Shown piece after piece: positions 53,291 to 63,093 of a DNA stretch of 64,000 bases (the first letter of the stretch is position 1; every line of letters starts with the position of its first letter). The translations under genes were made by a program, and so were the position numbers. Below the pieces are notes generated by a model, which was given only the letters and a program-made list of their open reading frames with translations, did not search any database and was not told the DNA's origin. The stretch covers positions 186,001 through 250,000 of IMG/VR virus record IMGVR_UViG_3300042350_002797. One strand, 5' to 3'.

Positions 53291-54589
53291 ATGTTAAGAA
53301 TTATCGATGTTCTTCAAGTTATTGTAAAATATAATCTTGAGGAACATCTATTTCAAAATTCAAATTTCAAATTACTTTCAATCGCAAAACTTTCTTTTAA
53401 GAATCTATTCGGCATAACAACTCCGCACGGAACTTTTGAATATCGATTACGTTGTGCGCTAGAGGAACTAGGACCAGTTTTTATCAAATTTGGACAAATG
53501 TTATCATCTAGACCTGATTTAATTCCTGCAAGTATTGTTAAAGAATTAAAATTTCTTAGAGAGTCAGTAAAGCCTTTTTCTGAACATGATGTAGAAAAAA
53601 TAATAGAATTAGAATTAAAAAACTCTACAGAAAACATATTTAAAAAGTTTGATAAATCTCCTATTGCTGCGGGTAGTGTAGCGCAAGTTCATTATGCTGA
53701 ACTACACACTGGTGAGTTAGTTGCGGTTAAAATATTAAGGCCTAAAATAGAATGTATTATTAAAAAAGACATAAAGTTATTTAGAAATATTTTACAATTA
53801 ATTTTTTTGTATAATAAAAATTTAAAAAAAATTAAGATAGAAAAAATTTTAGATGAGTTATCAAATAGTTTAATGTTAGAACTAGATTTATTGATAGAAT
53901 CTGATCATATGAAAAAGTTTGCATCTAATATGAAACATGTTTCATATGTATGTGTTCCTAAAGTATATGACAAATATAGTACAAAAACTATTTTAGTGAT
54001 GGAAAGAATGTTTGGAATTCCTATTGATCAAAAACAACAACTTATTGATCAAGGTGTTGATGTTAGGATAGTAGTTCAACAAGGTGTCGAAGTAATGATG
54101 TTACAACTATTCCGAGACGGATTTTTTCATGCAGATCAACATCCCGGAAACTTATGGATTAAACCTGATGGATCTCGAATTTATTTAGATTTTGGAATAG
54201 TTGGGTCTATTACAGAGGCAGATAGAAAATCATTATTGCAAATTCTTTTCTTTTTATATTCTAAAAATAATAAAAAAACGATTGAAAAATTAATAGATGC
54301 CGGATGGTTAAACAAAAATCAAAACTTAGACCAATTAGAAGTCGATTTAATTGATATAGCACAGCTATTTGTTAATCGAAAACAAAAAGATTTTTCAATT
54401 GGTAATGTATTAAATAAATTTTTCAATTTAGTAGAAAATTATCAAGGCAATGTGCCTTATCAATTTACATTATTGGTAAAAACAATTTTAGTAACTGAAG
54501 GTATAGTAAAGCAACTAACACCTGATCTAAATATTCAAAGTATAGCAGAGCCGGTTCTTTTAAAGTTTTTTACTAAATCTTTTACTTAA
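53291..54589 (+). CDS. ubiB: UbiB/ABC1/AarF atypical kinase
   Basis: RLR.ALEELGPVFIKFGQMLS.RPDL, AAGSVAQVH, VAVK, FFHADQHPGN, LDFGIVG. Confidence 0.93.
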   Translation: MLRIIDVLQVIVKYNLEEHLFQNSNFKLLSIAKLSFKNLFGITTPHGTFEYRLRCALEELGPVFIKFGQMLSSRPDLIPASIVKELKFLRESVKPFSEHDVEKIIELELKNSTENIFKKFDKSPIAAGSVAQVHYAELHTGELVAVKILRPKIECIIKKDIKLFRNILQLIFLYNKNLKKIKIEKILDELSNSLMLELDLLIESDHMKKFASNMKHVSYVCVPKVYDKYSTKTILVMERMFGIPIDQKQQLIDQGVDVRIVVQQGVEVMMLQLFRDGFFHADQHPGNLWIKPDGSRIYLDFGIVGSITEADRKSLLQILFFLYSKNNKKTIEKLIDAGWLNKNQNLDQLEVDLIDIAQLFVNRKQKDFSIGNVLNKFFNLVENYQGNVPYQFTLLVKTILVTEGIVKQLTPDLNIQSIAEPVLLKFFTKSFT

Positions 54590-55339
54590 GAGAAATCCTA
54601 TATAACCCTCTATATCTATTTCCCACCAACGATGTTGAAGTATCAATCGTCCAGGATGAGCATGATGATTATTGTGCCATCCGAACCCCATACCTAACCA
54701 ACCTAACCATAAATTATTCGTAGTTGCATCGTCTGTAGAAAAATTTCTATAACCTGATCTATGACACCAATAGTTAACTGCACCTAGTCTAAAAAAATCC
54801 ACACAGTAGGCCAAACAGTACATCATGAAGTACACCGGATCAATCAAAACAAGTGTAAAACAAAATGTAAAAATTATTTTATAATGATGTCTATGAAAGA
54901 AAAGATAAAACGGGTCACGCAACATCTGTACAGCTAATTTTTTAGCATACTTGTCTTGTAAATATTCTTGTTCGTTATTTCCCTGAGGAAATGTCCAAGC
55001 ATAGAATACGTAGAACCAACTGTTATACATTGGACTATGAGGATCGTTAACTTTATCTGCTCTAAGATGATGAGCTTTATGCTGTATGACCCAAAATGTC
55101 ACTGGACCAATAGCGCCTAAAGTAGATAAAAATCCTAATAGCCATTTTACAGGTTTATAGGTTTCGAACTGACCATGAGCAAAATATCTATGTGCTGCTA
55201 CACCATTGCCTACTACACCAATGACAAACCAAATTACTAAGAAACTGATCCAATGATTAGGTAGTTCCCATATAGCAATTAGTCCCCATATATGAAAAGG
55301 TAGAAATACTACCCAAAAGTTAAATCCATATTTTTTCAT
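54560..55339 (-). CDS. Membrane fatty acid desaturase
   Basis: HRYFAH, HKAHH, DPHSP, GWHNNHH, WWEID. Confidence 0.9.
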   Translation of the reverse strand: MKKYGFNFWVVFLPFHIWGLIAIWELPNHWISFLVIWFVIGVVGNGVAAHRYFAHGQFETYKPVKWLLGFLSTLGAIGPVTFWVIQHKAHHLRADKVNDPHSPMYNSWFYVFYAWTFPQGNNEQEYLQDKYAKKLAVQMLRDPFYLFFHRHHYKIIFTFCFTLVLIDPVYFMMYCLAYCVDFFRLGAVNYWCHRSGYRNFSTDDATTNNLWLGWLGMGFGWHNNHHAHPGRLILQHRWWEIDIEGYIGFLLSKRFSKKL

Positions 55340-56085
55340 TGTTTAATCAATCTAATAATGTAAGCAGGTATATCAAACTCCCACCAACGTTCTTGATTGT
55401 TCCAAGCATATGGTTTAGCGTGATGTGTATTATGCCACCCTTCTCCTAATGTGATAAGATTGGCAATCCAACTATTACGGCTTTGATCTTTGACGTCCGG
55501 ATAAGGTCTATAACCATGTCTATGTGCTATAACAATAATAGCACTAGTGCTGTGTAAGCAAAGACAAGCAGGTATAGCAAACACATATATTATCATTAAT
55601 GGATCATAAGCAAATAAAATTGATATCCAAATTAGAATTACCAGCAAATATTTTTTGTGTAGTTCTCGTTGAAAGACATTTTCACGCATATCACGAACTA
55701 GTTTTAAATCTAATCTAGGCATATTCCATATACCGAACCATGCTCGAAAATTTCCCAGTATATAAGGACTATGAGGATCTCCAGGACGTTCTGCTGATCT
55801 ATGATGCTGTCTATGTACAGCTACCCAAGCTAATGGACTACCTACCACAGTAATAACACCTATAAGACTAAACAGTTGCTCCCAGAATCGATGTGTTTTA
55901 AAACTACGATGACTGAGTAGTCTATGGTAACCAATGTTAATACCAAGTACACCTATGATCCAATAGGTTACTAAGGACACAAATAATAAACTATATTCAG
56001 CAATGTAGATAGCATATATTATACCTATTGTAGCAATTACATGATTAATTACTTGTAGTGTTCTTACAGTTTGATTATGTGTCAT
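55336..56085 (-). CDS. Membrane fatty acid desaturase
   Basis: GYHRLLSH, HRQHH, GDPHSP, GEGWHNTHH, WWEFD. Confidence 0.92.
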   Translation of the reverse strand: MTHNQTVRTLQVINHVIATIGIIYAIYIAEYSLLFVSLVTYWIIGVLGINIGYHRLLSHRSFKTHRFWEQLFSLIGVITVVGSPLAWVAVHRQHHRSAERPGDPHSPYILGNFRAWFGIWNMPRLDLKLVRDMRENVFQRELHKKYLLVILIWISILFAYDPLMIIYVFAIPACLCLHSTSAIIVIAHRHGYRPYPDVKDQSRNSWIANLITLGEGWHNTHHAKPYAWNNQERWWEFDIPAYIIRLIKQ

Positions 56086-56644
56086 TTTTATCATCTACAA
56101 CTAGCCATCCTAATTTAAGTAAGTCATCTCGAATTTCTTCAGTGACAACGCCTTCAGACACAAACTTAGTACGAGCAGCCCATTCGCAGAAAGTCTCTTC
56201 ATCTTTATCCCAACTGCCTGCAAGCCCTCCCATGCCACTACAGTACCAGTCAATGTAGTCACCTTCTTGACGCATGTCAGCAATGATGCCTCCAGCATAG
56301 CGCCAACTAGCACTCCATGTCTCTTCTTTTAATACTGGCCACAAATCACGTTTTTGAAATTCATTATTACACATTGCTGCATATAAATTTTGAGCGTAAT
56401 GTTCTTTATTGCGAACTTTTTCCAAAATCCAATCGCAAGTACGCAGATCATATTCTAAGTTATTTTTTTGCCACTCAGGATTTGTTTCATTTTCCTCGGC
56501 TCGAATTCCCCAGCTATTATAAAACTCTAGCATAGTCTTGACATGTTCATCATTTTCAGGAGTGCGACCTTTTTCAGCCCATCTTTCAAGGGACTTAGAT
56601 TTTTGAAAACTATAACGATCAGGACTTTTACTTGGCTTGTTCAT
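56075..56644 (-). CDS. Hypothetical phage protein
   Basis: NLEYDLR, YAQNLYAAMCNN, SWRYAGGIIA, DYIDWYCSG. Confidence 0.65.
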   Translation of the reverse strand: MNKPSKSPDRYSFQKSKSLERWAEKGRTPENDEHVKTMLEFYNSWGIRAEENETNPEWQKNNLEYDLRTCDWILEKVRNKEHYAQNLYAAMCNNEFQKRDLWPVLKEETWSASWRYAGGIIADMRQEGDYIDWYCSGMGGLAGSWDKDEETFCEWAARTKFVSEGVVTEEIRDDLLKLGWLVVDDKNDT

Positions 56645-56911: not shown

Positions 56912-56936
56912 AAAAATAGGCACCGAAGTGCCTATT
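56910..56936 (-). terminator. Intrinsic terminator
   Basis: AATAGGCAC-TTCG-GTGCCTATT followed by a T run. Confidence 0.85.
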
Positions 56937-57534
56937 ACATAGTTGGACCGTTGCCGTTTTTAAAACCAACTGTGCCACCTTCTGCTTCGATACGTTTGAT
57001 TACGTCTTCGAATAATATAGGCGTGTAGTCAGTTTGTTCTACACAAACGCAATGATAACGAGGATCGATTTCGTCACTGTACAGAACTTCACCTGTTTTA
57101 GCATTTATGCCACGTGCTTTTTTAACACGACCTGCATGTAAGTGTCCGTGTATGTTTACACCAAAACGTCCTAAACTTGCTTCGTGTACAGGAATATGAC
57201 TCAGTATCATTCCATTCATAACGTGGTAAGCACGAAGTTCTCGAAAATATTCGTTATATTCTGTATCACGAAAGATGTCGTGATTGCCTCGGATTAACAC
57301 TTTATCTCCGTTTAATCGAGACAATGTAGATAACGCTTTACGGTTAATAACCACATCACCTAAATGATAAACTTTATCGTTTGGGCGAACACGGTCGTTC
57401 CAACGGCGGATCATTTCTTCGTCCATTTCGCTAGGATCGTCCCAAGGACGAAGTTTAGTTCCGTCGTCGCGTAAGAATCGGCACACACCAGCATGACCAA
57501 AGTGCGTGTCGCTAACTAAAAATACTGCTGGCAT
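56935..57534 (-). CDS. Calcineurin-like metallophosphoesterase
   Basis: SDTHFGH, YHLGDV, RGNHD, LSHIP, HGHLH. Confidence 0.9.
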   Translation of the reverse strand: MPAVFLVSDTHFGHAGVCRFLRDDGTKLRPWDDPSEMDEEMIRRWNDRVRPNDKVYHLGDVVINRKALSTLSRLNGDKVLIRGNHDIFRDTEYNEYFRELRAYHVMNGMILSHIPVHEASLGRFGVNIHGHLHAGRVKKARGINAKTGEVLYSDEIDPRYHCVCVEQTDYTPILFEDVIKRIEAEGGTVGFKNGNGPTM

Positions 57535-57594: not shown

Positions 57595-58200
57595 CTATAC
57601 TGCTAGGTATTCTACGTCTGCTGCCAAAATAAATCTAAATTTGTTGCTCTGAACTATTCCAGGTCTGTGCCAATAATCACTAGGGTATACTAACCAACTA
57701 AATTTTTCTGGTTTAACATAAAATTTTCCAGAGTTTTCTGGACCGTTAGGTGCAAACTCTGTGCCACAATAATTTAGATCAGTTACATCGTCAGGAATAT
57801 CTAAATACCAAATTCCGCTTAATAATTTACTTTTTTCAGTGCTAGGATGCCAATGATGATGCCAAAGATTGTTTCTATCTTCTGCACCTTCTAAGTTAGT
57901 CATGAAACTCCAAGCCTGCATATTAAAAACTTTGACTTCTCTTCCTAGATACATGAATACACTGAAAAGAAAACTCATTCTGTATTTTAACCAAACTTCT
58001 TCTGTTCGATTAAAAATATTTTCTTTAGTTTGATATTTTGGGCTGTTAGTATAGTAGTTGCCGTTATCAATAATTTGTTTTACAATATTGCAAGCATTAT
58101 CGTTATCTTGTTTGTTAATGACAGAACTGAAGTCGAACTTTTTAAAGATTTGATTGCTATCTATTACAGTAGAATTTTTAGGTAGGATAATATTATTCAT
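57595..58200 (-). CDS. Putative 2OG-Fe(II) oxygenase
   Basis: AWSF, WHHH, LSGIWYL, GTEF, YPS.YWH.P, RFILAAD. Confidence 0.65.
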   Translation of the reverse strand: MNNIILPKNSTVIDSNQIFKKFDFSSVINKQDNDNACNIVKQIIDNGNYYTNSPKYQTKENIFNRTEEVWLKYRMSFLFSVFMYLGREVKVFNMQAWSFMTNLEGAEDRNNLWHHHWHPSTEKSKLLSGIWYLDIPDDVTDLNYCGTEFAPNGPENSGKFYVKPEKFSWLVYPSDYWHRPGIVQSNKFRFILAADVEYLAV

Positions 58201-58207
58201 ATATTAA

Positions 58208-58286
58208 TGGTCGGGGAAGAGGGATTCGAACTCTCGATCTCCTGCTCCCAAAGCAGGCGCTTTAAACCAGACTAAGCTACACCCCG
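58208..58286 (-). tRNA. tRNA-Pro(TGG)
   Basis: Cloverleaf; CCTGC-TT TGG GA-GCAGG; encoded CCA. Confidence 0.95.
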
Positions 58287-58291
58287 AAACT

Positions 58292-58367
58292 TGGAGCGGG
58301 TGATCAGGTTCGAACTGACGACATTCTGCTTGGAAGGCAGACGCTCTACCAACTGAGCTACACCCGC
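58292..58367 (-). tRNA. tRNA-Gly(TCC)
   Basis: TCTGC-CT TCC AA-GCAGA; ends TCCA. Confidence 0.95.
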
Positions 58368-58371
58368 ATGT

Positions 58372-58572
58372 GTTCTTGTTAGGCTACTAATCCTCATTAG
58401 CCCCTAACTGAGTTGTTACCCTGTCCCCTGACGTTCCTTATGGCTTGTGCCAGCTAAACCTACGATTTTTCTTGCACCCATGTAAGCGGGTTCTGAGGCG
58501 TCATCGTATGAGCCCTGGTATTTTGGTGACACCAACCACCCCCTTTAATAACGCAGAAGGGACTGCGAGGTT
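58372..58572 (-). ncRNA. Candidate ~200-nt pseudoknotted ncRNA between tRNA-Thr and tRNA-Gly
   Basis: GC-rich, multiple complementary segments, H-type pseudoknot near the 5' end and a hairpin at the 3' end. Confidence 0.5.
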
Positions 58573-58574
58573 CT

Positions 58575-58650
58575 TGGTGCTGGTCGCAGGACTCGAACCC
58601 GCCACCTACGGATTACAAATCCGTTGCTCTACCTGATGAGCTAGACCAGC
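58575..58650 (-). tRNA. tRNA-Thr(TGT)
   Basis: ACGGA-TT TGT AA-TCCGT; CCA. Confidence 0.95.
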
Positions 58651-58657
58651 GTAAACT

Positions 58658-58849
58658 TTATTCTACTACTGTTTCTTCAACTTTGTGTCCGTATTTAATT
58701 AAAGTATTAATGCGACGTTGAATTTTCATTTTGTGCTTAGGACGACAAGATCCGAGCAATTCATTTAATTGTTTAACATTCAAAGGACCAAGACGTGTTT
58801 TACCAGTCTTGGTTTTCATAGGATCACGTTTAAAACTTTTAGCTGCCAT
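58658..58849 (-). CDS. Small basic hypothetical protein
   Basis: 63 aa, RBS GAGGA; KTKTGKTRLGPLN. Confidence 0.6.
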   Translation of the reverse strand: MAAKSFKRDPMKTKTGKTRLGPLNVKQLNELLGSCRPKHKMKIQRRINTLIKYGHKVEETVVE

Positions 58850-59076
58850 TATTCCTCATCCTTAAATTCTTCAAGCAATTTTGCCTGCCATTCTGATTCG
58901 GATAAGTTATGTAGTCCAGTACAATATCCGCTGGCACTACGACCACATCCGCAAGGGACTTGATTTTCTTCTATAGTACTCATATTTTTACCTTTATTAA
59001 AAATAGCATCCCAGTTTTTATCATAAGTCGATTGACTTACACTAAAAGGTCTAGGACGAGATCCTTTGCCTGCCAT
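58849..59076 (-). CDS. Small protein with C-terminal CDGSH-like Fe-S motif
   Basis: MAGKGSRPRP...NWDAIF, then internal M and CGCGRSASGYCTGLH. Confidence 0.6.
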   Translation of the reverse strand: MAGKGSRPRPFSVSQSTYDKNWDAIFNKGKNMSTIEENQVPCGCGRSASGYCTGLHNLSESEWQAKLLEEFKDEE

Positions 59077-59077
59077 T

Positions 59078-59248
59078 TTATTCTGCTGTCCCAGTGTTAC
59101 GATCTGCTTTACTAGCCTTAGGCCTGATAGCTGCTGCTAGTTCTGCTTGAATCATTGCACGTTTAAATTCGTAACTACGAGGAGGCAACATGCTGGCCAT
59201 TATCATTTTACTAGACTTACTTAGTTTAAAATTACCTTTAGCTTTCAT
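59078..59248 (-). CDS. Small basic hypothetical protein
   Basis: MKAKGNFKLSKSSK...FKRAMIQAELA; GGAG upstream. Confidence 0.55.
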   Translation of the reverse strand: MKAKGNFKLSKSSKMIMASMLPPRSYEFKRAMIQAELAAAIRPKASKADRNTGTAE

Positions 59249-59414
59249 TTTTACGATTCTCCGGAATAAATTCATTCATTGCTACAACTAGCCATCCAGT
59301 AAATCCAGTAACATAGGCACTGAACATGTTTGGATTATCAAAATTAGTTCCCATACCAATAGCAGTAAAAACTACTATTAATACAGGAGTCCACTTCTTT
59401 AAGAATAATAGCAT
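59238..59414 (-). CDS. Small membrane protein (58 aa)
   Basis: Not in track. MLLFLKKWTPVLIVVFTAIGMG...NES*. Confidence 0.5.
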   Translation of the reverse strand: MLLFLKKWTPVLIVVFTAIGMGTNFDNPNMFSAYVTGFTGWLVVAMNEFIPENRKNES

Positions 59415-59828: not shown

Positions 59829-59927
59829 TGGTGTGGTCGGTAGGCTTCGAACCTACAAGAGCTTGGCTTTGCCTGTGCCCATCCCCGACCCAACGAGTGG
59901 GAGCTTTTCCAGTTTGCTTACGACCAC
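59829..59927 (-). ncRNA. tRNA-like RNA with non-canonical anticodon arm
   Basis: Acceptor GTGGTCG/CGACCAC-ACCA, D-arm and T-arm GTAGG-TTCGAAG-CCTAC are present, but there is no 5-bp/7-nt anticodon arm. Confidence 0.75.
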
Positions 59928-59932
59928 AGCTA

Positions 59933-59961
59933 ATTATATAGTCGTAAATGGTAACTGTCAA
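59933..59961 (-). promoter_or_regulatory. Consensus sigma70 promoter for the tRNA-like RNA
   Basis: TTGACA-17-TATAAT; predicted start site at about the RNA 5' end. Confidence 0.85.
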
Positions 59962-61760: not shown

Positions 61761-62588
61761 TTAATCTGTATAAATTTTCGAATAATCGAAAGCTATTCGA
61801 TGTAAAACTCTATTGGCCATATCTTCAAATGGCCAACGTTTATGAATACTTAACCATTGTTCAGAAATTACAATGTCTCCGTCTTCCCAATCATGATGAT
61901 AAACATATTTTTCTTGTAAGATATGATCAGTTAAAAGATTCATAATTTCTTTAAACTCTTTTTCTTCGTAGTTTTCAAATCCGAAAATTTGTAGAAAAGG
62001 AAAAAATAAACCTTTGTTTCCTTCTTTATTAATTTGTACTAAATTAACCGGATTATCTTTATCTATATGTTCTATAAAAAATCTACTATTGGAATATGAA
62101 CCTACTTTGTATCCACAGTATACTTTGATATTGTTAATTTTTTCTTTTATGTCGCTAGGCAAATCTTCATAAGAACGGATGTTGTTTATCCAACTAGTTC
62201 TTGAACCTTTTGTTCCTTCTACACCATACAACCAAATTAATGGAGATCGTTGCTTGTTGCTAGGTTGATTTGCATGCCAATCTAAAGCAGCTTTATGACC
62301 AAATAATCCTTCCTCACCATACTCGTTCTTTTTTCCGGTAACACGTAGTATACCATCATTTACTCTGATGTGTTTAATTCTTTCTACGTCTGGAGGATAA
62401 TATTGATATTTTCCTATTTTAGAACAAAAATTTAACTCTTGTTCAGGAGTAAGTTTTTGATTTTTAAAAACAACAACCATGTTTTTTACAACTAACTTAC
62501 CTATTTCTATAATTTCTTGATCGGACAGATCATTTAAATTTTCATTTATAAAAACGGTCCACCCGTTGTCTGCATAACTTATATTCAT
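61761..62588 (-). CDS. TauD/TfdA family dioxygenase
   Basis: VVVFKNQKLTPE, DWHAN, WLY...GS.T.W, H.WEDGDIVI......HKR, RVLHR. Confidence 0.85.
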   Translation of the reverse strand: MNISYADNGWTVFINENLNDLSDQEIIEIGKLVVKNMVVVFKNQKLTPEQELNFCSKIGKYQYYPPDVERIKHIRVNDGILRVTGKKNEYGEEGLFGHKAALDWHANQPSNKQRSPLIWLYGVEGTKGSRTSWINNIRSYEDLPSDIKEKINNIKVYCGYKVGSYSNSRFFIEHIDKDNPVNLVQINKEGNKGLFFPFLQIFGFENYEEKEFKEIMNLLTDHILQEKYVYHHDWEDGDIVISEQWLSIHKRWPFEDMANRVLHRIAFDYSKIYTD

Positions 62589-63001: not shown

Positions 63002-63093
63002 TGGTACCAGCGGTAGGAATCGAACCTACTCAAGAACGCTAATCTGGCGCTAAAAGGTGTATAAGACCTCTCTGACTTCCAAGTCTCGCTGGC
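63002..63093 (-). tRNA. tRNA-Ile(TAT), atypical
   Basis: GAGGT-CT TAT AC-ACCTT; 4-nt D-loop; long variable region; ends ACCA. Confidence 0.75.

What the first reader, a model, noticed from the sequence alone, without database searches (positions are those of the whole stretch)
58372..58572. Pseudoknot-rich ~200-nt RNA embedded in the tRNA operon
It begins right after the tRNA-Thr CCA. CGCAG-TCCCTT-CTGCG forms a hairpin whose loop can pair with AAGGGG (58540-58567, H-type pseudoknot). Further pairings are TTGGTG/CACCAA, TACGAT/ATCGTA, ACCC/GGGT, TGGC/GCCA, a crossing TGACG/CGTCA, and a 3' hairpin GTTAGG..GCTAAT-GAGG-ATTAGT..CCTAAC (58378-58408). It is much more GC-rich than the spacers nearby. 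Large ncRNAs (GOLLD, ROOL) and HDV-like theta ribozymes are known in phage tRNA clusters, but I cannot match this one to a family. tRNA processing would release it as a discrete RNA.
Basis: partly seen in the sequence, partly recalled or inferred. Interest (0 to 1): 0.65.

Follow-up and report, generated by a model that had tools for sequence, protein, structure and literature searches.

The report
New pseudoknotted RNA in phage tRNA array
A roughly 200-base RNA gene wedged between two tRNA genes of a giant T4-like lake phage belongs to a large, previously undescribed family of very intricately folded non-coding RNAs (five pseudoknots) whose function is still unknown.

Summary
On the minus strand, window 58574-58368 (207 nt) lies between tRNA-Thr and tRNA-Gly. 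It has no promoter or terminator of its own.

More than 115 distinct homologs exist in IMG/VR and lake metagenome contigs. In those checked (91 loci) they lie in phage tRNA arrays on the tRNA strand.

Covariation supports seven nested helices and five pseudoknot pairings. One of these pairs the first structured bases with the loop of the 3' terminal hairpin, closing the molecule into a ring. A 3' module of about 50 nt carries most of the 20 invariant bases.

Three are not: TTGGTG/CACCAA, TGGC/GCCA and TGACG/CGTCA.

No Rfam 15 family matches, and ARAGORN finds no tmRNA. T4's own tRNA-operon RNAs, rnaC and rnaD, do not match the covariance model. The HDV-like/theta and pistol layouts do not fit.

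The host genome is a 365-kb phage with a T4-type capsid gene, and it also carries a diverged second copy. One freshwater metatranscriptome holds the RNA body at high depth while the flanking genes are absent.

Most likely it is a stable trans-acting RNA released by tRNA processing. Its function is inferred, not shown.

The parts
58575..58650 (-). tRNA-Thr(UGU) with encoded CCA, directly upstream of the RNA
   Evidence: ARAGORN; Rfam tRNA 67.2 bits
58368..58574 (-). The whole 207-nt inter-tRNA RNA. The structured core is 58570-58378.
   Evidence: Covariance model R1 scores it at 149.6 bits.
58567..58570 (-). PK0 5' strand: the leader CCUC, which pairs with the P9 loop GAGG (58395-58392) and closes the RNA into a ring. 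C58567 is shared with the outermost P1 pair.
   Evidence: Leader and loop covary. GAGG goes with CCUC in 6 of 6. GGGA goes with UCCC or CCCC, UAGUG with CACUA, and type B GGAAA with UUUCC.
58552..58567 (-). P1 hairpin CGCAG/CUGCG. Its loop UCCCUU (58562-58557) is the 5' strand of PK1.
   Evidence: (helix 1)
58540..58545 (-). PK1 3' strand AAGGGG, pairing with the P1 loop
   Evidence: Native duplex is better than a swapped partner in 81 of 84. Covarying examples. Column counts (helices 1-2).
58516..58540 (-). PK1b plus P2. GGU (58540-58538) pairs with ACC in the P2 loop (58527-58525). The P2 stem is UGGU (58534-58531) with ACCA (58519-58516).
   Evidence: GGU/ACC, CGU/ACG and GGC/GCC covary (helix 3). 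P2 is helix 2.
58496..58515 (-). P3 hairpin GGGC/GCCU. Its loop carries the PK2 5' strand UACGAU (58508-58503).
   Evidence: helix 3 (95.5% paired); helix 4
58474..58493 (-). P5 hairpin (GAACCC ... GGGUGC), inserted between P3 and the PK2 3' strand
   Evidence: helix 4 (all 8 pairs show changes on both sides)
58461..58466 (-). PK2 3' strand AUCGUA
   Evidence: (68 of 84)
58442..58460 (-). P6 hairpin GGUUU/AAGCC. Its loop carries the PK3 5' strand CUGGC (58453-58449).
   Evidence: helices 5-6
58428..58432 (-). PK3 3' strand GUCAG
   Evidence: (71 of 84)
58410..58426 (-). Junction GGAC (G, A and C invariant; the first G nearly so), then the small hairpin HpA GGGU-AACA-ACUC
   Evidence: Invariant columns; helix 7 (98.2% paired)
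58378..58408 (-). 3' terminal hairpin. It is made of P8 GUUAGG/CCUAAC, an internal loop G / AG with invariant flanking bases, P9 GCUAAU/AUUAGU with an invariant G-U pair, and the loop GAGG.
   Evidence: helix 8 (97.3% paired, 9 of 12 pairs with changes on both sides)
58368..58377 (-). 10-nt trailer AAGAACACAU between the RNA and the tRNA-Gly 5' end. RNase P is expected to cut at its end.
   Evidence: Sequence. The RNase P site is inferred from the tRNA-Gly start.
58208..58367 (-). tRNA-Gly(UCC) and tRNA-Pro(UGG), directly downstream
59933..59961 (-). Perfect sigma-70 consensus (TTGACA-17-TATAAT). It is the nearest upstream promoter-like site on the RNA's strand.
   Evidence: This is a consensus match only.

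Best explanation
SHOWN
- Window 58574-58368 (minus strand) encodes a member of a large family of non-coding RNAs of about 200 nt. The family has not been described before.
- It occurs in giant T4-like freshwater phages. In the 91 loci checked it lies inside their tRNA arrays on the tRNA strand.
- The fold is a chain of H-type pseudoknots: P1/PK1, PK1b/P2, P3/PK2 with an inserted hairpin P5, and P6/PK3.
- The chain is followed by a small hairpin and a long 3' hairpin. The loop of the 3' hairpin pairs back to the first structured nucleotides (PK0), so the molecule is closed into a ring.
- Most invariant bases sit in the 3' module: GGAC, the HpA hairpin, and the P8/P9 internal loop.

INFERRED
- It is transcribed as part of the polycistronic tRNA precursor.
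- 3' maturation of tRNA-Thr would set its 5' end (the spacer after the CCA is 4 nt in the window, 0-4 nt in other compact members).
- RNase P cleavage at tRNA-Gly, followed by exonucleolytic trimming back to P8, would set its 3' end.
- The compact pseudoknotted body, with its 5' end tucked in, then persists as a stable RNA.
- It acts in trans: the invariant 3' module serves as the recognition surface for a conserved partner (a host or phage protein, or the translation or RNA-processing machinery), and the variable pseudoknot ring serves as scaffold.
- This matches what is assumed, and likewise unproven, for T4's species 1 and species 2 RNAs.
For: Homologs. nhmmer and the covariance model find 97 hits in 91 loci. 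There are 117 distinct sequences, forming 53 clusters at under 75% identity.

Nested helices. 87.8% of cells are paired against 71.0% after shuffling. 38 of 44 pairs show changes on both sides. The covariation score is 0.469 against 0.186 (0 of 500 shuffles reach it), and slid controls reach at most 0.107.

Pseudoknots on a structure-blind MAFFT alignment. 84.3% paired against 64.2%. Covariation 0.502 against 0.190 (0 of 500). In the swap test the native partner beats swapped partners in 81, 70, 68 and 71 of 84 for PK1, PK1b, PK2 and PK3.

PK0. Leader and loop classes go together.

Strand. The invariant G-U pair (97 of 97) and frequent G-U/U-G pairs would be C-A on the other strand.

Non-coding. 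No frame is open in more than 2 of 85 members, and lengths are evenly spread modulo 3.

Context.
- 37 of 71 type-A copies with an upstream tRNA in the locus start within about 10 nt of its end.
- 68 of 77 have a tRNA within 300 nt downstream. The flanking tRNA identities vary.
- There is no promoter- or terminator-like site between tRNA-Thr and tRNA-Pro.

Phage-restricted. Only one true hit was found in one genome each of 185,579 prokaryote species. It lies on a 5.5-kb contig that carries a tRNA array.

Genome type. The Gp23 capsid family scores 331.7 bits. Two relatives of 353 and 355 kb, 98% and 100% complete, also carry Gp23 and the RNA.

RNA libraries. In run X16, contigs covering 58419-58561 have depth 61-161, including one with no differences, while the flanking ORFs have depth 0.

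Precedent. T4 carries rnaD and rnaC directly after tRNA-Arg. They are still 'RNAs of yet unknown functions' (PMC9697503).
Against: - No partner, no mature ends and no phenotype are known.
- The RNA data are assembled contigs, so they cannot show 5' or 3' ends. They may also contain DNA.
- One RNA run (X15) holds the flanking genes at depth 2-5 but hardly any of the RNA.
- A 200-nt contig in X18 bridges the tRNA-Thr/RNA junction. That is either unprocessed precursor or DNA.
- An RNA this intricate, with its 5' boundary fixed next to a tRNA 3' end or a stop codon, would also suit a ribozyme or a cis-acting processing or stability element.
- In many relatives it sits in the 3' UTR of a 190-aa ORF rather than directly after a tRNA.
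Confidence: 0.5

Rival explanations
1. It is a large self-cleaving or otherwise catalytic RNA. It would cut at its own 5' boundary, freeing the upstream tRNA 3' end or mRNA, as HDV-like theta ribozymes do in gut phages but with a different and much larger fold.
For: - The 5' boundary is fixed. The first structured base lies 0-4 nt after an encoded CCA in the compact cases, and about 4-7 nt after a stop codon in others.
- The fold is multi-pseudoknotted with about 20 invariant bases, a level of complexity typical of ribozymes and riboswitches.
- Theta ribozymes set the precedent of a ribozyme abutting phage tRNA 3' ends (PMC10879173).
Against: - The invariant bases cluster in the 3' module, about 150 nt from the 5' boundary. 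Positions just before the leader are variable.
- The upstream tRNAs in the compact cases examined encode CCA, so a cut leaving a 2',3'-cyclic phosphate would be harmful. Only 4.5% of theta-associated tRNAs encode CCA.
- No self-cleaving family of Rfam matches.
- A contig bridging the junction exists in an RNA library.
Confidence: 0.12
2. It is a cis-acting stability or processing element. As a compact exonuclease-proof knot inside the precursor, it would protect the upstream tRNA or mRNA 3' end, or organise cleavage of the array, with no role once released.
For: - It is always co-oriented with tRNAs and lies inside the transcription unit.
- In many relatives it follows the stop codon of an ORF, like a 3' UTR structure.
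- Closely related phages differ by a clean presence or absence of the element between the same two tRNA-Met genes, so it is dispensable as a module.
Against: - Blocking exonucleases needs only a stable hairpin, not about 20 invariant bases and five covarying pseudoknots.
- The flanking tRNA identities vary widely. There are only one or two copies per array of about 20-30 tRNAs.
- Several of the contigs examined carry two diverged paralogs that share the same invariant core, which points to a sequence-specific partner.
Confidence: 0.15
3. It is a mimic or decoy aimed at tRNA-handling machinery. Possible targets are host anticodon nucleases or other tRNA-targeting defences, the CCA-adding enzyme, RNase P, EF-Tu or the ribosome. 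The P8/P9 stack with its loop-to-leader contact would stand in for an acceptor/T-arm with an elbow. This is a special case of the trans-acting model.
For: - The residence in a tRNA array.
- P8 plus P9 stack to about 12-13 bp, the length of an acceptor/T-arm stack. The conserved GG of the terminal loop contacts a distant CC, as at a tRNA elbow. The resemblance itself is my own reading from general knowledge, not a test.
Against: - There is no T-loop sequence and no acceptor stem made from the 5' and 3' ends.
- The 3' tail after P8 is AC(U/C)UU in most members and AAGA in the window, not NCCA.
- ARAGORN and the Rfam tRNA, tmRNA and YrlA models do not match it.
Confidence: 0.1
4. It is a riboswitch-like sensor controlling the downstream tRNAs or genes.
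For: The complexity of the fold and the strong conservation of unpaired bases.
Against: - There is no terminator, no anti-terminator and no ribosome-binding-site platform.
- What lies downstream is variable, usually a tRNA, at 5 to more than 300 nt.
- No riboswitch family matches.
Confidence: 0.03

Closest known systems
T4 species 1 and species 2 RNAs (rnaC, rnaD)
   Same: - Small stable RNAs encoded inside the tRNA operon of a T4-type phage, directly after a tRNA and on the tRNA strand.
- Function unknown.
- T4: tRNA-Arg, then rnaD (119 nt), then rnaC (139 nt) (PMC9697503).
   Different: - No detectable homology. Model R1 with filters off scores at most 4.6 bits anywhere in the T4 region and does not hit rnaC or rnaD.
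- T4 rnaC ends in a T-arm-like CCGGGUUCGAAUCCCGG. This RNA has none.
- This RNA is one molecule of about 200 nt with five pseudoknots.
GOLLD and ROOL large ornate RNAs
   Same: Complex-folded RNAs of unknown biochemical function that are often found in phages or prophages next to tRNA genes (background knowledge; the cryo-EM preprint appears in the listing).
   Different: - They are about 500-800 nt (background knowledge) and have Rfam models. None matches here.
- This RNA is about 200 nt, and multimer formation was not tested.
HDV-like theta ribozymes of gut phages
   Same: A structured, pseudoknotted RNA whose 5' edge lies within a few nucleotides of a phage tRNA 3' end (against PMC10879173).
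   Different: - The theta motif is a minimal HDV-like ribozyme. Its helix layout, as I know it from general knowledge, pairs the first nucleotides (P1) with the strand after P3 and has a catalytic C in J4/2.
- Here the strand after the first hairpin (UUAUUA) is not complementary to the leader. The RNA is about 200 nt, much larger than a minimal HDV-like ribozyme.
- The neighbouring tRNAs encode CCA, against 4.5% for theta.
- The habitat is lake water, not gut.
tmRNA
   Same: A ring of successive H-type pseudoknots closed by a pairing that involves the 5' end. It is also found in some large phages (background knowledge).
   Different: - No acceptor stem made from the 5' and 3' ends, no T-arm, no CCA, no tag reading frame.
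- ARAGORN finds no tmRNA and no Rfam tmRNA model matches.
- No frame is open in the family.
Upstream pseudoknot domain plus tRNA-like structure of tobamovirus 3' UTRs
   Same: A row of consecutive pseudoknots followed by a conserved 3'-terminal stacked helix (resemblance from general knowledge only).
   Different: Those are plant RNA viruses, and their 3' end is aminoacylatable with CCA. Here the 3' tail is not CCA, and the RNA is excised from a DNA-phage tRNA precursor.

Membership tests
Any Rfam 15 family (4227 models) | Covariance-model match at or near the gathering score | tested here: not met
   No match overlaps the element at the gathering threshold. None at E<=10 on 601 nt around it. 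None at E<=5 on eight diverged members, including the type-B copy.
HDV-like / theta ribozyme | P1 formed by the first nucleotides after the cleavage site pairing with the strand that follows P3 (nested double pseudoknot) | tested here: not met
   After the first hairpin comes UUAUUA-AAGGGG. The leader is AGAACCUC, so there is no complementarity. The loop pairs with AAGGGG over 6 bp, not a 2-bp P1.1.
HDV-like / theta ribozyme | Catalytic C at the first position of J4/2 | tested here: inconclusive
   No P4 or J4/2 can be assigned in this topology, so the position does not exist to be checked.
HDV-like / theta ribozyme | 5' edge within +/-5 nt of a tRNA 3' end | tested here: met
   In the window, 4 nt separate the CCA from the first paired base. 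37 of 71 type-A copies lie within about 10 nt of an upstream tRNA end. Many others follow a stop codon instead.
HDV-like / theta ribozyme | Associated tRNAs lack an encoded CCA (95.5% in the paper) | tested here: not met
   tRNA-Thr ends in ACCA. So do the upstream tRNAs in the compact homologs examined.
T4 rnaC / rnaD | Sequence and structure homology to the T4 RNAs | tested here: not met
   cmsearch with filters off on T4 66000-76000 gives a best score of 4.6 bits, and not at rnaC or rnaD.
T4 rnaC / rnaD | Encoded in the tRNA operon of a T4-type phage, adjacent to a tRNA | tested here: met
   Gp23 at 331.7 bits in the same genome. Position between tRNA-Thr and tRNA-Gly.
tmRNA | tRNA-like domain (acceptor stem from both ends, T-arm, CCA) and a tag reading frame | tested here: not met
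   ARAGORN reports no tmRNA. No Rfam tmRNA match. No conserved open frame.
GOLLD / ROOL | Match to the family models; length about 500-800 nt | tested here: not met
   No Rfam match. The length is 207 nt, bounded by two tRNAs.
Pistol ribozyme | The P1 loop forms a 6-bp pseudoknot with an internal loop enclosed by P2 and P3; cleavage at a G-U in the P2-P3 junction | tested here: not met
   The P1 loop/6-bp pseudoknot part is present. But no helix encloses the pseudoknot 3' strand together with the next hairpin. The Rfam Pistol model does not match.
tRNA-like structure (aminoacylatable 3' end) | 3'-terminal NCCA after an acceptor-like helix | tested here: not met
   The tail after P8 is AAGAACACAU in the window and mostly ACUUU or ACCUU in the family.

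The most novel reading that the evidence does not exclude
The RNA may be the first member of a new class of large functional RNAs specific to giant T4-like phages. It would be either a new self-processing ribozyme that matures tRNA-array transcripts, or the RNA subunit or inhibitor of a translation- or tRNA-directed machine. Its ring-closed five-pseudoknot architecture, with the 5' end locked into the loop of the 3' hairpin, would be a fold not seen before.
Probability: 0.2. Interest if true: 0.9.

Novelty: new member of a known kind. Interest (0 to 1): 0.72.

Why it matters
Natural RNAs of this complexity are rare. This one has about 200 nt, seven helices, five covarying pseudoknots, about 20 invariant bases and more than 100 diverged members. 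The known examples of such complexity have nearly all turned out to be ribozymes, riboswitches or RNP cores.

This family is abundant in lake viromes. It is confined to a clade of phages of about 350-365 kb with T4-type capsid genes. It sits in the tRNA operon, as do T4's species 1 and 2 RNAs, which remain RNAs of yet unknown function (PMC9697503).

A second family with far richer comparative data makes that old question testable. The covariation model gives exact mutants to make. The two paralogs per genome and the natural presence/absence variants give ready-made controls.

It also shows that tRNA arrays of huge phages hide non-tRNA genes that standard annotation misses.

Tried and rejected
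1. Rfam at gathering and at permissive E-values, on the window and on eight diverged members: nothing.

2. blastn of the element against 50,697 cultured-phage records: no match. A consensus-like member gave only 19-23-nt hits at E of 3-9 in Synechococcus phages. The covariance model rejects the two regions tested, from S-H25 and S-CAM22 (best 4.9 bits), so these hits look like chance.

3. Homology to T4 rnaC/rnaD: rejected.

4. A functional link to the genes upstream in relatives. These are a 190-aa coiled-coil-like ORF with no family above threshold, and a 76-aa RNA-polymerase-omega-like ORF (PF01192, 52 bits). Neither was found in the window's own, 100% complete genome, so the RNA does not seem to need them.

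5. An alternative helix pairing the invariant GAC (58425-58423) with the GUU that opens P8. RNAalifold proposed it. The third position covaries with the 3' strand of P8 instead (C-G, U-A, U-G, never C-A), so P8 is preferred. The role of GAC stays open.

6. The leader pairing with the G-run after PK1. The leader does not change when GGU becomes CGU, so this was rejected (by eye).

7. The swap test for PK0 was not significant overall (native better in 38 of 84). Most members share one motif. The class table was used instead.

8. A tRNA-like NCCA 3' end: not conserved.

9. A protein-coding reading: no conserved frame.

10. The supplement of the 10,006-candidate phage RNA catalogue (PMC10690425) is not held as text. 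Whether this motif is among its unnamed candidates could not be checked.

11. RNA-library contigs could not give ends. An Illumina adapter joined at 58419 in run X16 marks one cDNA end inside HpA, but it is a single contig and I draw nothing from it.

Full report
WHAT IS THERE

All 17 tRNA genes that ARAGORN finds in the window lie on the minus strand between 58208 and 63718. tRNA-Thr(UGU) occupies 58650-58575 and ends in an encoded CCA. tRNA-Gly(UCC) starts at 58367 and tRNA-Pro(UGG) follows. The 207 nt in between (58574-58368, minus strand) have a GC content of about 0.5, like the tRNAs. The neighbouring ORFs and spacers have about 0.27-0.38.

There is no sigma-70-like promoter and no terminator-like site between tRNA-Thr and tRNA-Pro. 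The nearest promoter-like site on that strand is a perfect TTGACA-17-TATAAT at 59961-59933. The element is therefore most simply read as part of the tRNA transcription unit.

The window is part of a 364,554-bp IMG/VR virus record that CheckV rates as 100% complete. The record encodes a T4-type major capsid protein (Pfam Gp23, 331.7 bits).

NOT A KNOWN FAMILY

- Rfam 15 (4227 models) matches only the tRNAs at the gathering threshold.
- At E<=10 on 601 nt around the element, nothing overlaps it.
- The same holds at E<=5 for eight diverged members of the family.
- ARAGORN reports no tmRNA.
- blastn against 50,697 cultured-phage records finds nothing. Short hits obtained with a consensus-like member in Synechococcus phages look like chance, because the covariance model rejects the two regions tested.

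THE FAMILY

Loci fetched through the neighbouring 2OG-oxygenase gene contained diverged copies of the element. A degenerate pattern of its conserved 3' core then found at least 119 viral contigs and at least 120 metagenome contigs.

Among one genome each of 185,579 bacterial and archaeal species there were only two pattern matches. The model confirms only one (158.8 bits). It lies on a 5.5-kb contig carrying five tRNA genes that was binned into a Polynucleobacter MAG. That is probably a phage fragment, so the family is in effect phage-restricted.

Two other records of 353 and 355 kb, 98% and 100% complete, carry both Gp23 and the RNA. Three partial records of 200-230 kb carry the RNA. Sequencing runs that hold the DNA are labelled lake water metagenomes.

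No reading frame is open in more than 2 of 85 members, and lengths are evenly spread modulo 3. The element is non-coding.

STRUCTURE

I built a covariance model (R1) from a 42-sequence MAFFT alignment with a hand-derived nested structure. I then aligned 97 matches from 91 loci to it.

On that alignment:
- 87.8% of cells form standard pairs, against 71.0% after shuffling.
- 38 of 44 pairs show changes on both sides.
- The covariation score is 0.469 against 0.186 (0 of 500 shuffles reach it).
- Sliding the 3' partners by 1-3 columns drops it to at most 0.107.

That alignment is fitted to the model, so I also counted the pseudoknot pairs on the structure-blind MAFFT alignment:
- 84.3% paired against 64.2%.
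- Covariation 0.502 against 0.190 (0 of 500).
- Slid controls at most 0.151.
- 12 of 14 pairs with changes on both sides.

An alignment-free swap test gave the same answer. The native loop/partner duplex is more stable than duplexes with partners from other members in 81 of 84 (PK1), 70 of 84 (PK1b), 68 of 84 (PK2) and 71 of 84 (PK3). The covarying examples are plain. They include ACACUUU/AAAGUG, CACCUCU/AGAGGGGUG, UAAUGC/GCAUUA, CUAGG/CCUAG, UCAGAUA/UAUCUGA and CUGGC/GUCAG.

Frequent G-U pairs, among them one invariant in 97 of 97, fix the strand as the tRNA strand.

THE FOLD IN WINDOW COORDINATES

These were verified.
- Leader CCUC, 58570-58567.
- P1 CGCAG/CUGCG, 58567-58552. Its loop UCCCUU pairs with AAGGGG at 58545-58540 (PK1).
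- The next bases, GGU at 58540-58538, pair with ACC in the loop of P2 (PK1b). P2 is UGGU/ACCA, 58534-58516.
- P3 GGGC/GCCU, 58515-58496. Its loop UACGAU pairs with AUCGUA at 58466-58461 (PK2). Hairpin P5 (58493-58474) and an A-rich linker lie in between.
- P6 GGUUU/AAGCC, 58460-58442. Its loop CUGGC pairs with GUCAG at 58432-58428 (PK3), again across an A-rich linker.
- The junction GGAC, 58426-58423, in which G, A and C are invariant.
- Hairpin HpA GGGU-AACA-ACUC, 58421-58410.
- The 3' hairpin, 58408-58378: P8, an internal loop G / AG, P9, and the loop GAGG.

RING CLOSURE (PK0)

The P9 loop is complementary to the leader, and the two change together:
- GAGG loops occur only with CCUC leaders (6 of 6).
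- GGGA loops go with UCCC or CCCC.
- UAGUG goes with CACUA.
- GGUGU goes with ACACC.
- In the diverged type-B copies, GGAAA goes with UUUCC.

So the first structured bases are locked to the last hairpin loop, and the chain of pseudoknots is closed into a ring. A global swap test for PK0 was not significant, because most members share one motif. I therefore rate PK0 as well supported but less firmly than PK1-PK3.

Five of the eight pairings are right: the hairpin, its loop pseudoknot, UACGAU/AUCGUA, ACCC/GGGU and the 3' hairpin. Three are complementary in this sequence only and are displaced by covarying alternatives: TTGGTG/CACCAA, TGGC/GCCA and TGACG/CGTCA.

GENOMIC CONTEXT

The RNA is always on the strand of the tRNAs around it.
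- Of 71 type-A copies with an upstream tRNA in the locus, 37 begin within about 10 nt of its 3' end.
- The upstream tRNA is often Thr, but also Gly, Asn, Val, Trp, Asp, Leu, Met, Ser, Pro or Arg.
- Of 77 with a downstream tRNA, 68 have it within 300 nt and 19 within 30 nt.
- In the compact cases the CCA is followed by 0-4 purine-rich bases and then the leader. The 3' hairpin is followed by 5-12 nt and the next tRNA.
- In another large group the RNA starts a few bases after the stop codon of a 190-aa ORF, which is itself preceded by an RNA-polymerase-omega-like ORF. The window's genome has neither gene, so the RNA does not depend on them.

Two closely related contigs differ by a clean presence or absence of the roughly 200-nt element between the same two tRNA-Met genes. 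One contig has lost its 5' half.

Several of the contigs examined, and the window's own genome at record position 364056-364263 outside the window, carry a second, diverged paralog ('type B'). It has the same architecture and the same invariant 3' core.

EXPRESSION

Six metatranscriptome runs hold part of the stretch. Four were laid on 57600-59300.
- X16: contigs covering 58419-58561 have k-mer depths of 61-161, one of them identical to the window. The flanking ORFs have no coverage, and the tRNA-Thr junction contig has depth 6.7.
- X18: a 200-nt contig spans 58435-58633, bridging tRNA-Thr and the RNA.
- X15: the flanking genes are present at depth 2-5, but the RNA is hardly seen.

These are assembled contigs. 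They show that the RNA body is present in RNA libraries, and in one case strongly over-represented relative to its neighbours. They show no ends, and DNA carry-over cannot be excluded.

INTERPRETATION

Shown: a real, conserved, phage-specific structured RNA with the fold above.

Inferred: it is cut out of the tRNA precursor. Maturation of the tRNA-Thr 3' end would act on one side. RNase P at tRNA-Gly, plus trimming back to P8, would act on the other. It would then persist as a compact, nuclease-resistant molecule.

The pattern of conservation suggests how it works. Peripheral helices vary freely by compensatory change, while about 20 bases of the 3' module never change. This points to a scaffold that presents a sequence-specific surface to a conserved partner.

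That is the model usually assumed for T4's rnaC and rnaD, which sit directly after tRNA-Arg in the T4 tRNA operon and are still of unknown function (PMC9697503). The present RNA is analogous in position but not homologous: the best R1 score in the T4 region is 4.6 bits, and not at those genes.

Rivals I cannot exclude:
- A large ribozyme acting at the fixed 5' boundary. Against it: the encoded CCA, the distance of the invariant bases from that boundary, and the junction-bridging contig.
- A purely cis-acting stability or processing element. Against it: the sequence invariance and the paralogs.
- A tRNA-machinery decoy. This is a sub-case of the main model, and no T-loop or CCA is present.
- A riboswitch. 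There is no expression platform.

HDV-like/theta, pistol, tmRNA, GOLLD/ROOL and tRNA-like-structure membership were each tested feature by feature and are not met (see the membership table).

NOVELTY AND LIMITS

I found no description of this family in Rfam 15 or in the papers searched. A catalogue of 8,495 unnamed IMG/VR candidate RNAs exists (PMC10690425). Its supplement is not held here, so prior listing as an anonymous candidate cannot be excluded.

As a kind of thing, a stable structured RNA riding in a phage tRNA operon, it has precedents. As a family and a fold it is new. Function, mature ends and partner remain open.

Noticed in passing
Outside the window: own genome record position 364056-364263 (+), locus L184:1501-1708. 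Also L084:8033-8245, L067:2212-2420, L154:3214-3423, L137:14240-14451, L063:8027-8243 and L121:9409-9620.: A second, strongly diverged paralog ('type B') of the same RNA sits on the same genomes as type A. It has the same architecture and the same invariant 3' core, and a leader/loop pair UUUCC/GGAAA. In the own genome it lies at the very end of the linear record, with no tRNA within the 2 kb held.
   Followed up: partly
window 59829-59927 (-): ARAGORN calls a 99-nt 'tRNA-Pro(UGG)' here, just downstream of a perfect sigma-70 consensus (59961-59933). It has an acceptor stem (GUGGUCG/CGACCAC), a T-arm (GUAGGUUCGAAGCCUAC) and ACCA, but about 25 extra nt. No Rfam family matches at E<=1, not even tRNA. 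nhmmer finds it conserved in more than 20 related contigs. It may be an aberrant or intron-bearing tRNA, or another tRNA-like RNA.
   Followed up: partly
window 63002-63093 (-): A 92-nt 'tRNA-Ile(UAU)' with a long extra arm. It falls below the Rfam tRNA gathering score. Its best Rfam match is tRNA-Sec at 31.3 bits (cut-off 47). ARAGORN predicts the same 91-92-nt gene in many related contigs.
   Followed up: partly
window 58576-58570 and 58378-58372 (-); L025:2718-2933 against L026:3144-3154: The 7-mer CAAGAAC flanks the element on both sides in the window. In L025 the flanks are AAGAAC and ACGAAC. The closely related L026 has the two tRNA-Met genes only 9 nt apart (AAGATTTAT) with no RNA. This is a clean cassette-like indel with short direct repeats. 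It may be chance, a shared processing signal, or a trace of insertion.
   Followed up: partly
L030:4476-4706 (+), L035:4298-4549 (+): Relatives encode an ORF of 76-83 aa just upstream of the RNA locus. The L030 copy was scanned and matches RNA polymerase omega/Rpb6 (PF01192, 52 bits). This is unusual for a phage. No copy was found in the window's own genome.
   Followed up: partly
window 54560-56094 (-), 61761-62588 (-), 57595-58200 (-), 56935-57534 (-): Auxiliary-metabolism-type genes are interleaved with the tRNA array: two fatty-acid desaturase homologs, a TauD/TfdA-family dioxygenase, a weak 2OG-Fe(II) oxygenase match and a calcineurin-like phosphoesterase.
   Followed up: no
window 58419 (run X16): One metatranscriptome contig (depth 160.7) carries Illumina adapter sequence joined at 58419. 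That marks a cDNA end inside the small hairpin HpA. No laid X16 piece listed in table 8 covers 58368-58418, the invariant 3' module. This could be a break in the assembly graph in a region shared by many phages, a reverse-transcription stop, or a real RNA end.
   Followed up: no
L048:5365-5444 and L050:2-86: L048 is a natural variant in which the stop codon of the upstream ORF is joined directly to the 3' third of the RNA, so the 5' pseudoknots are deleted. L050 is cut by the contig end.
   Followed up: no
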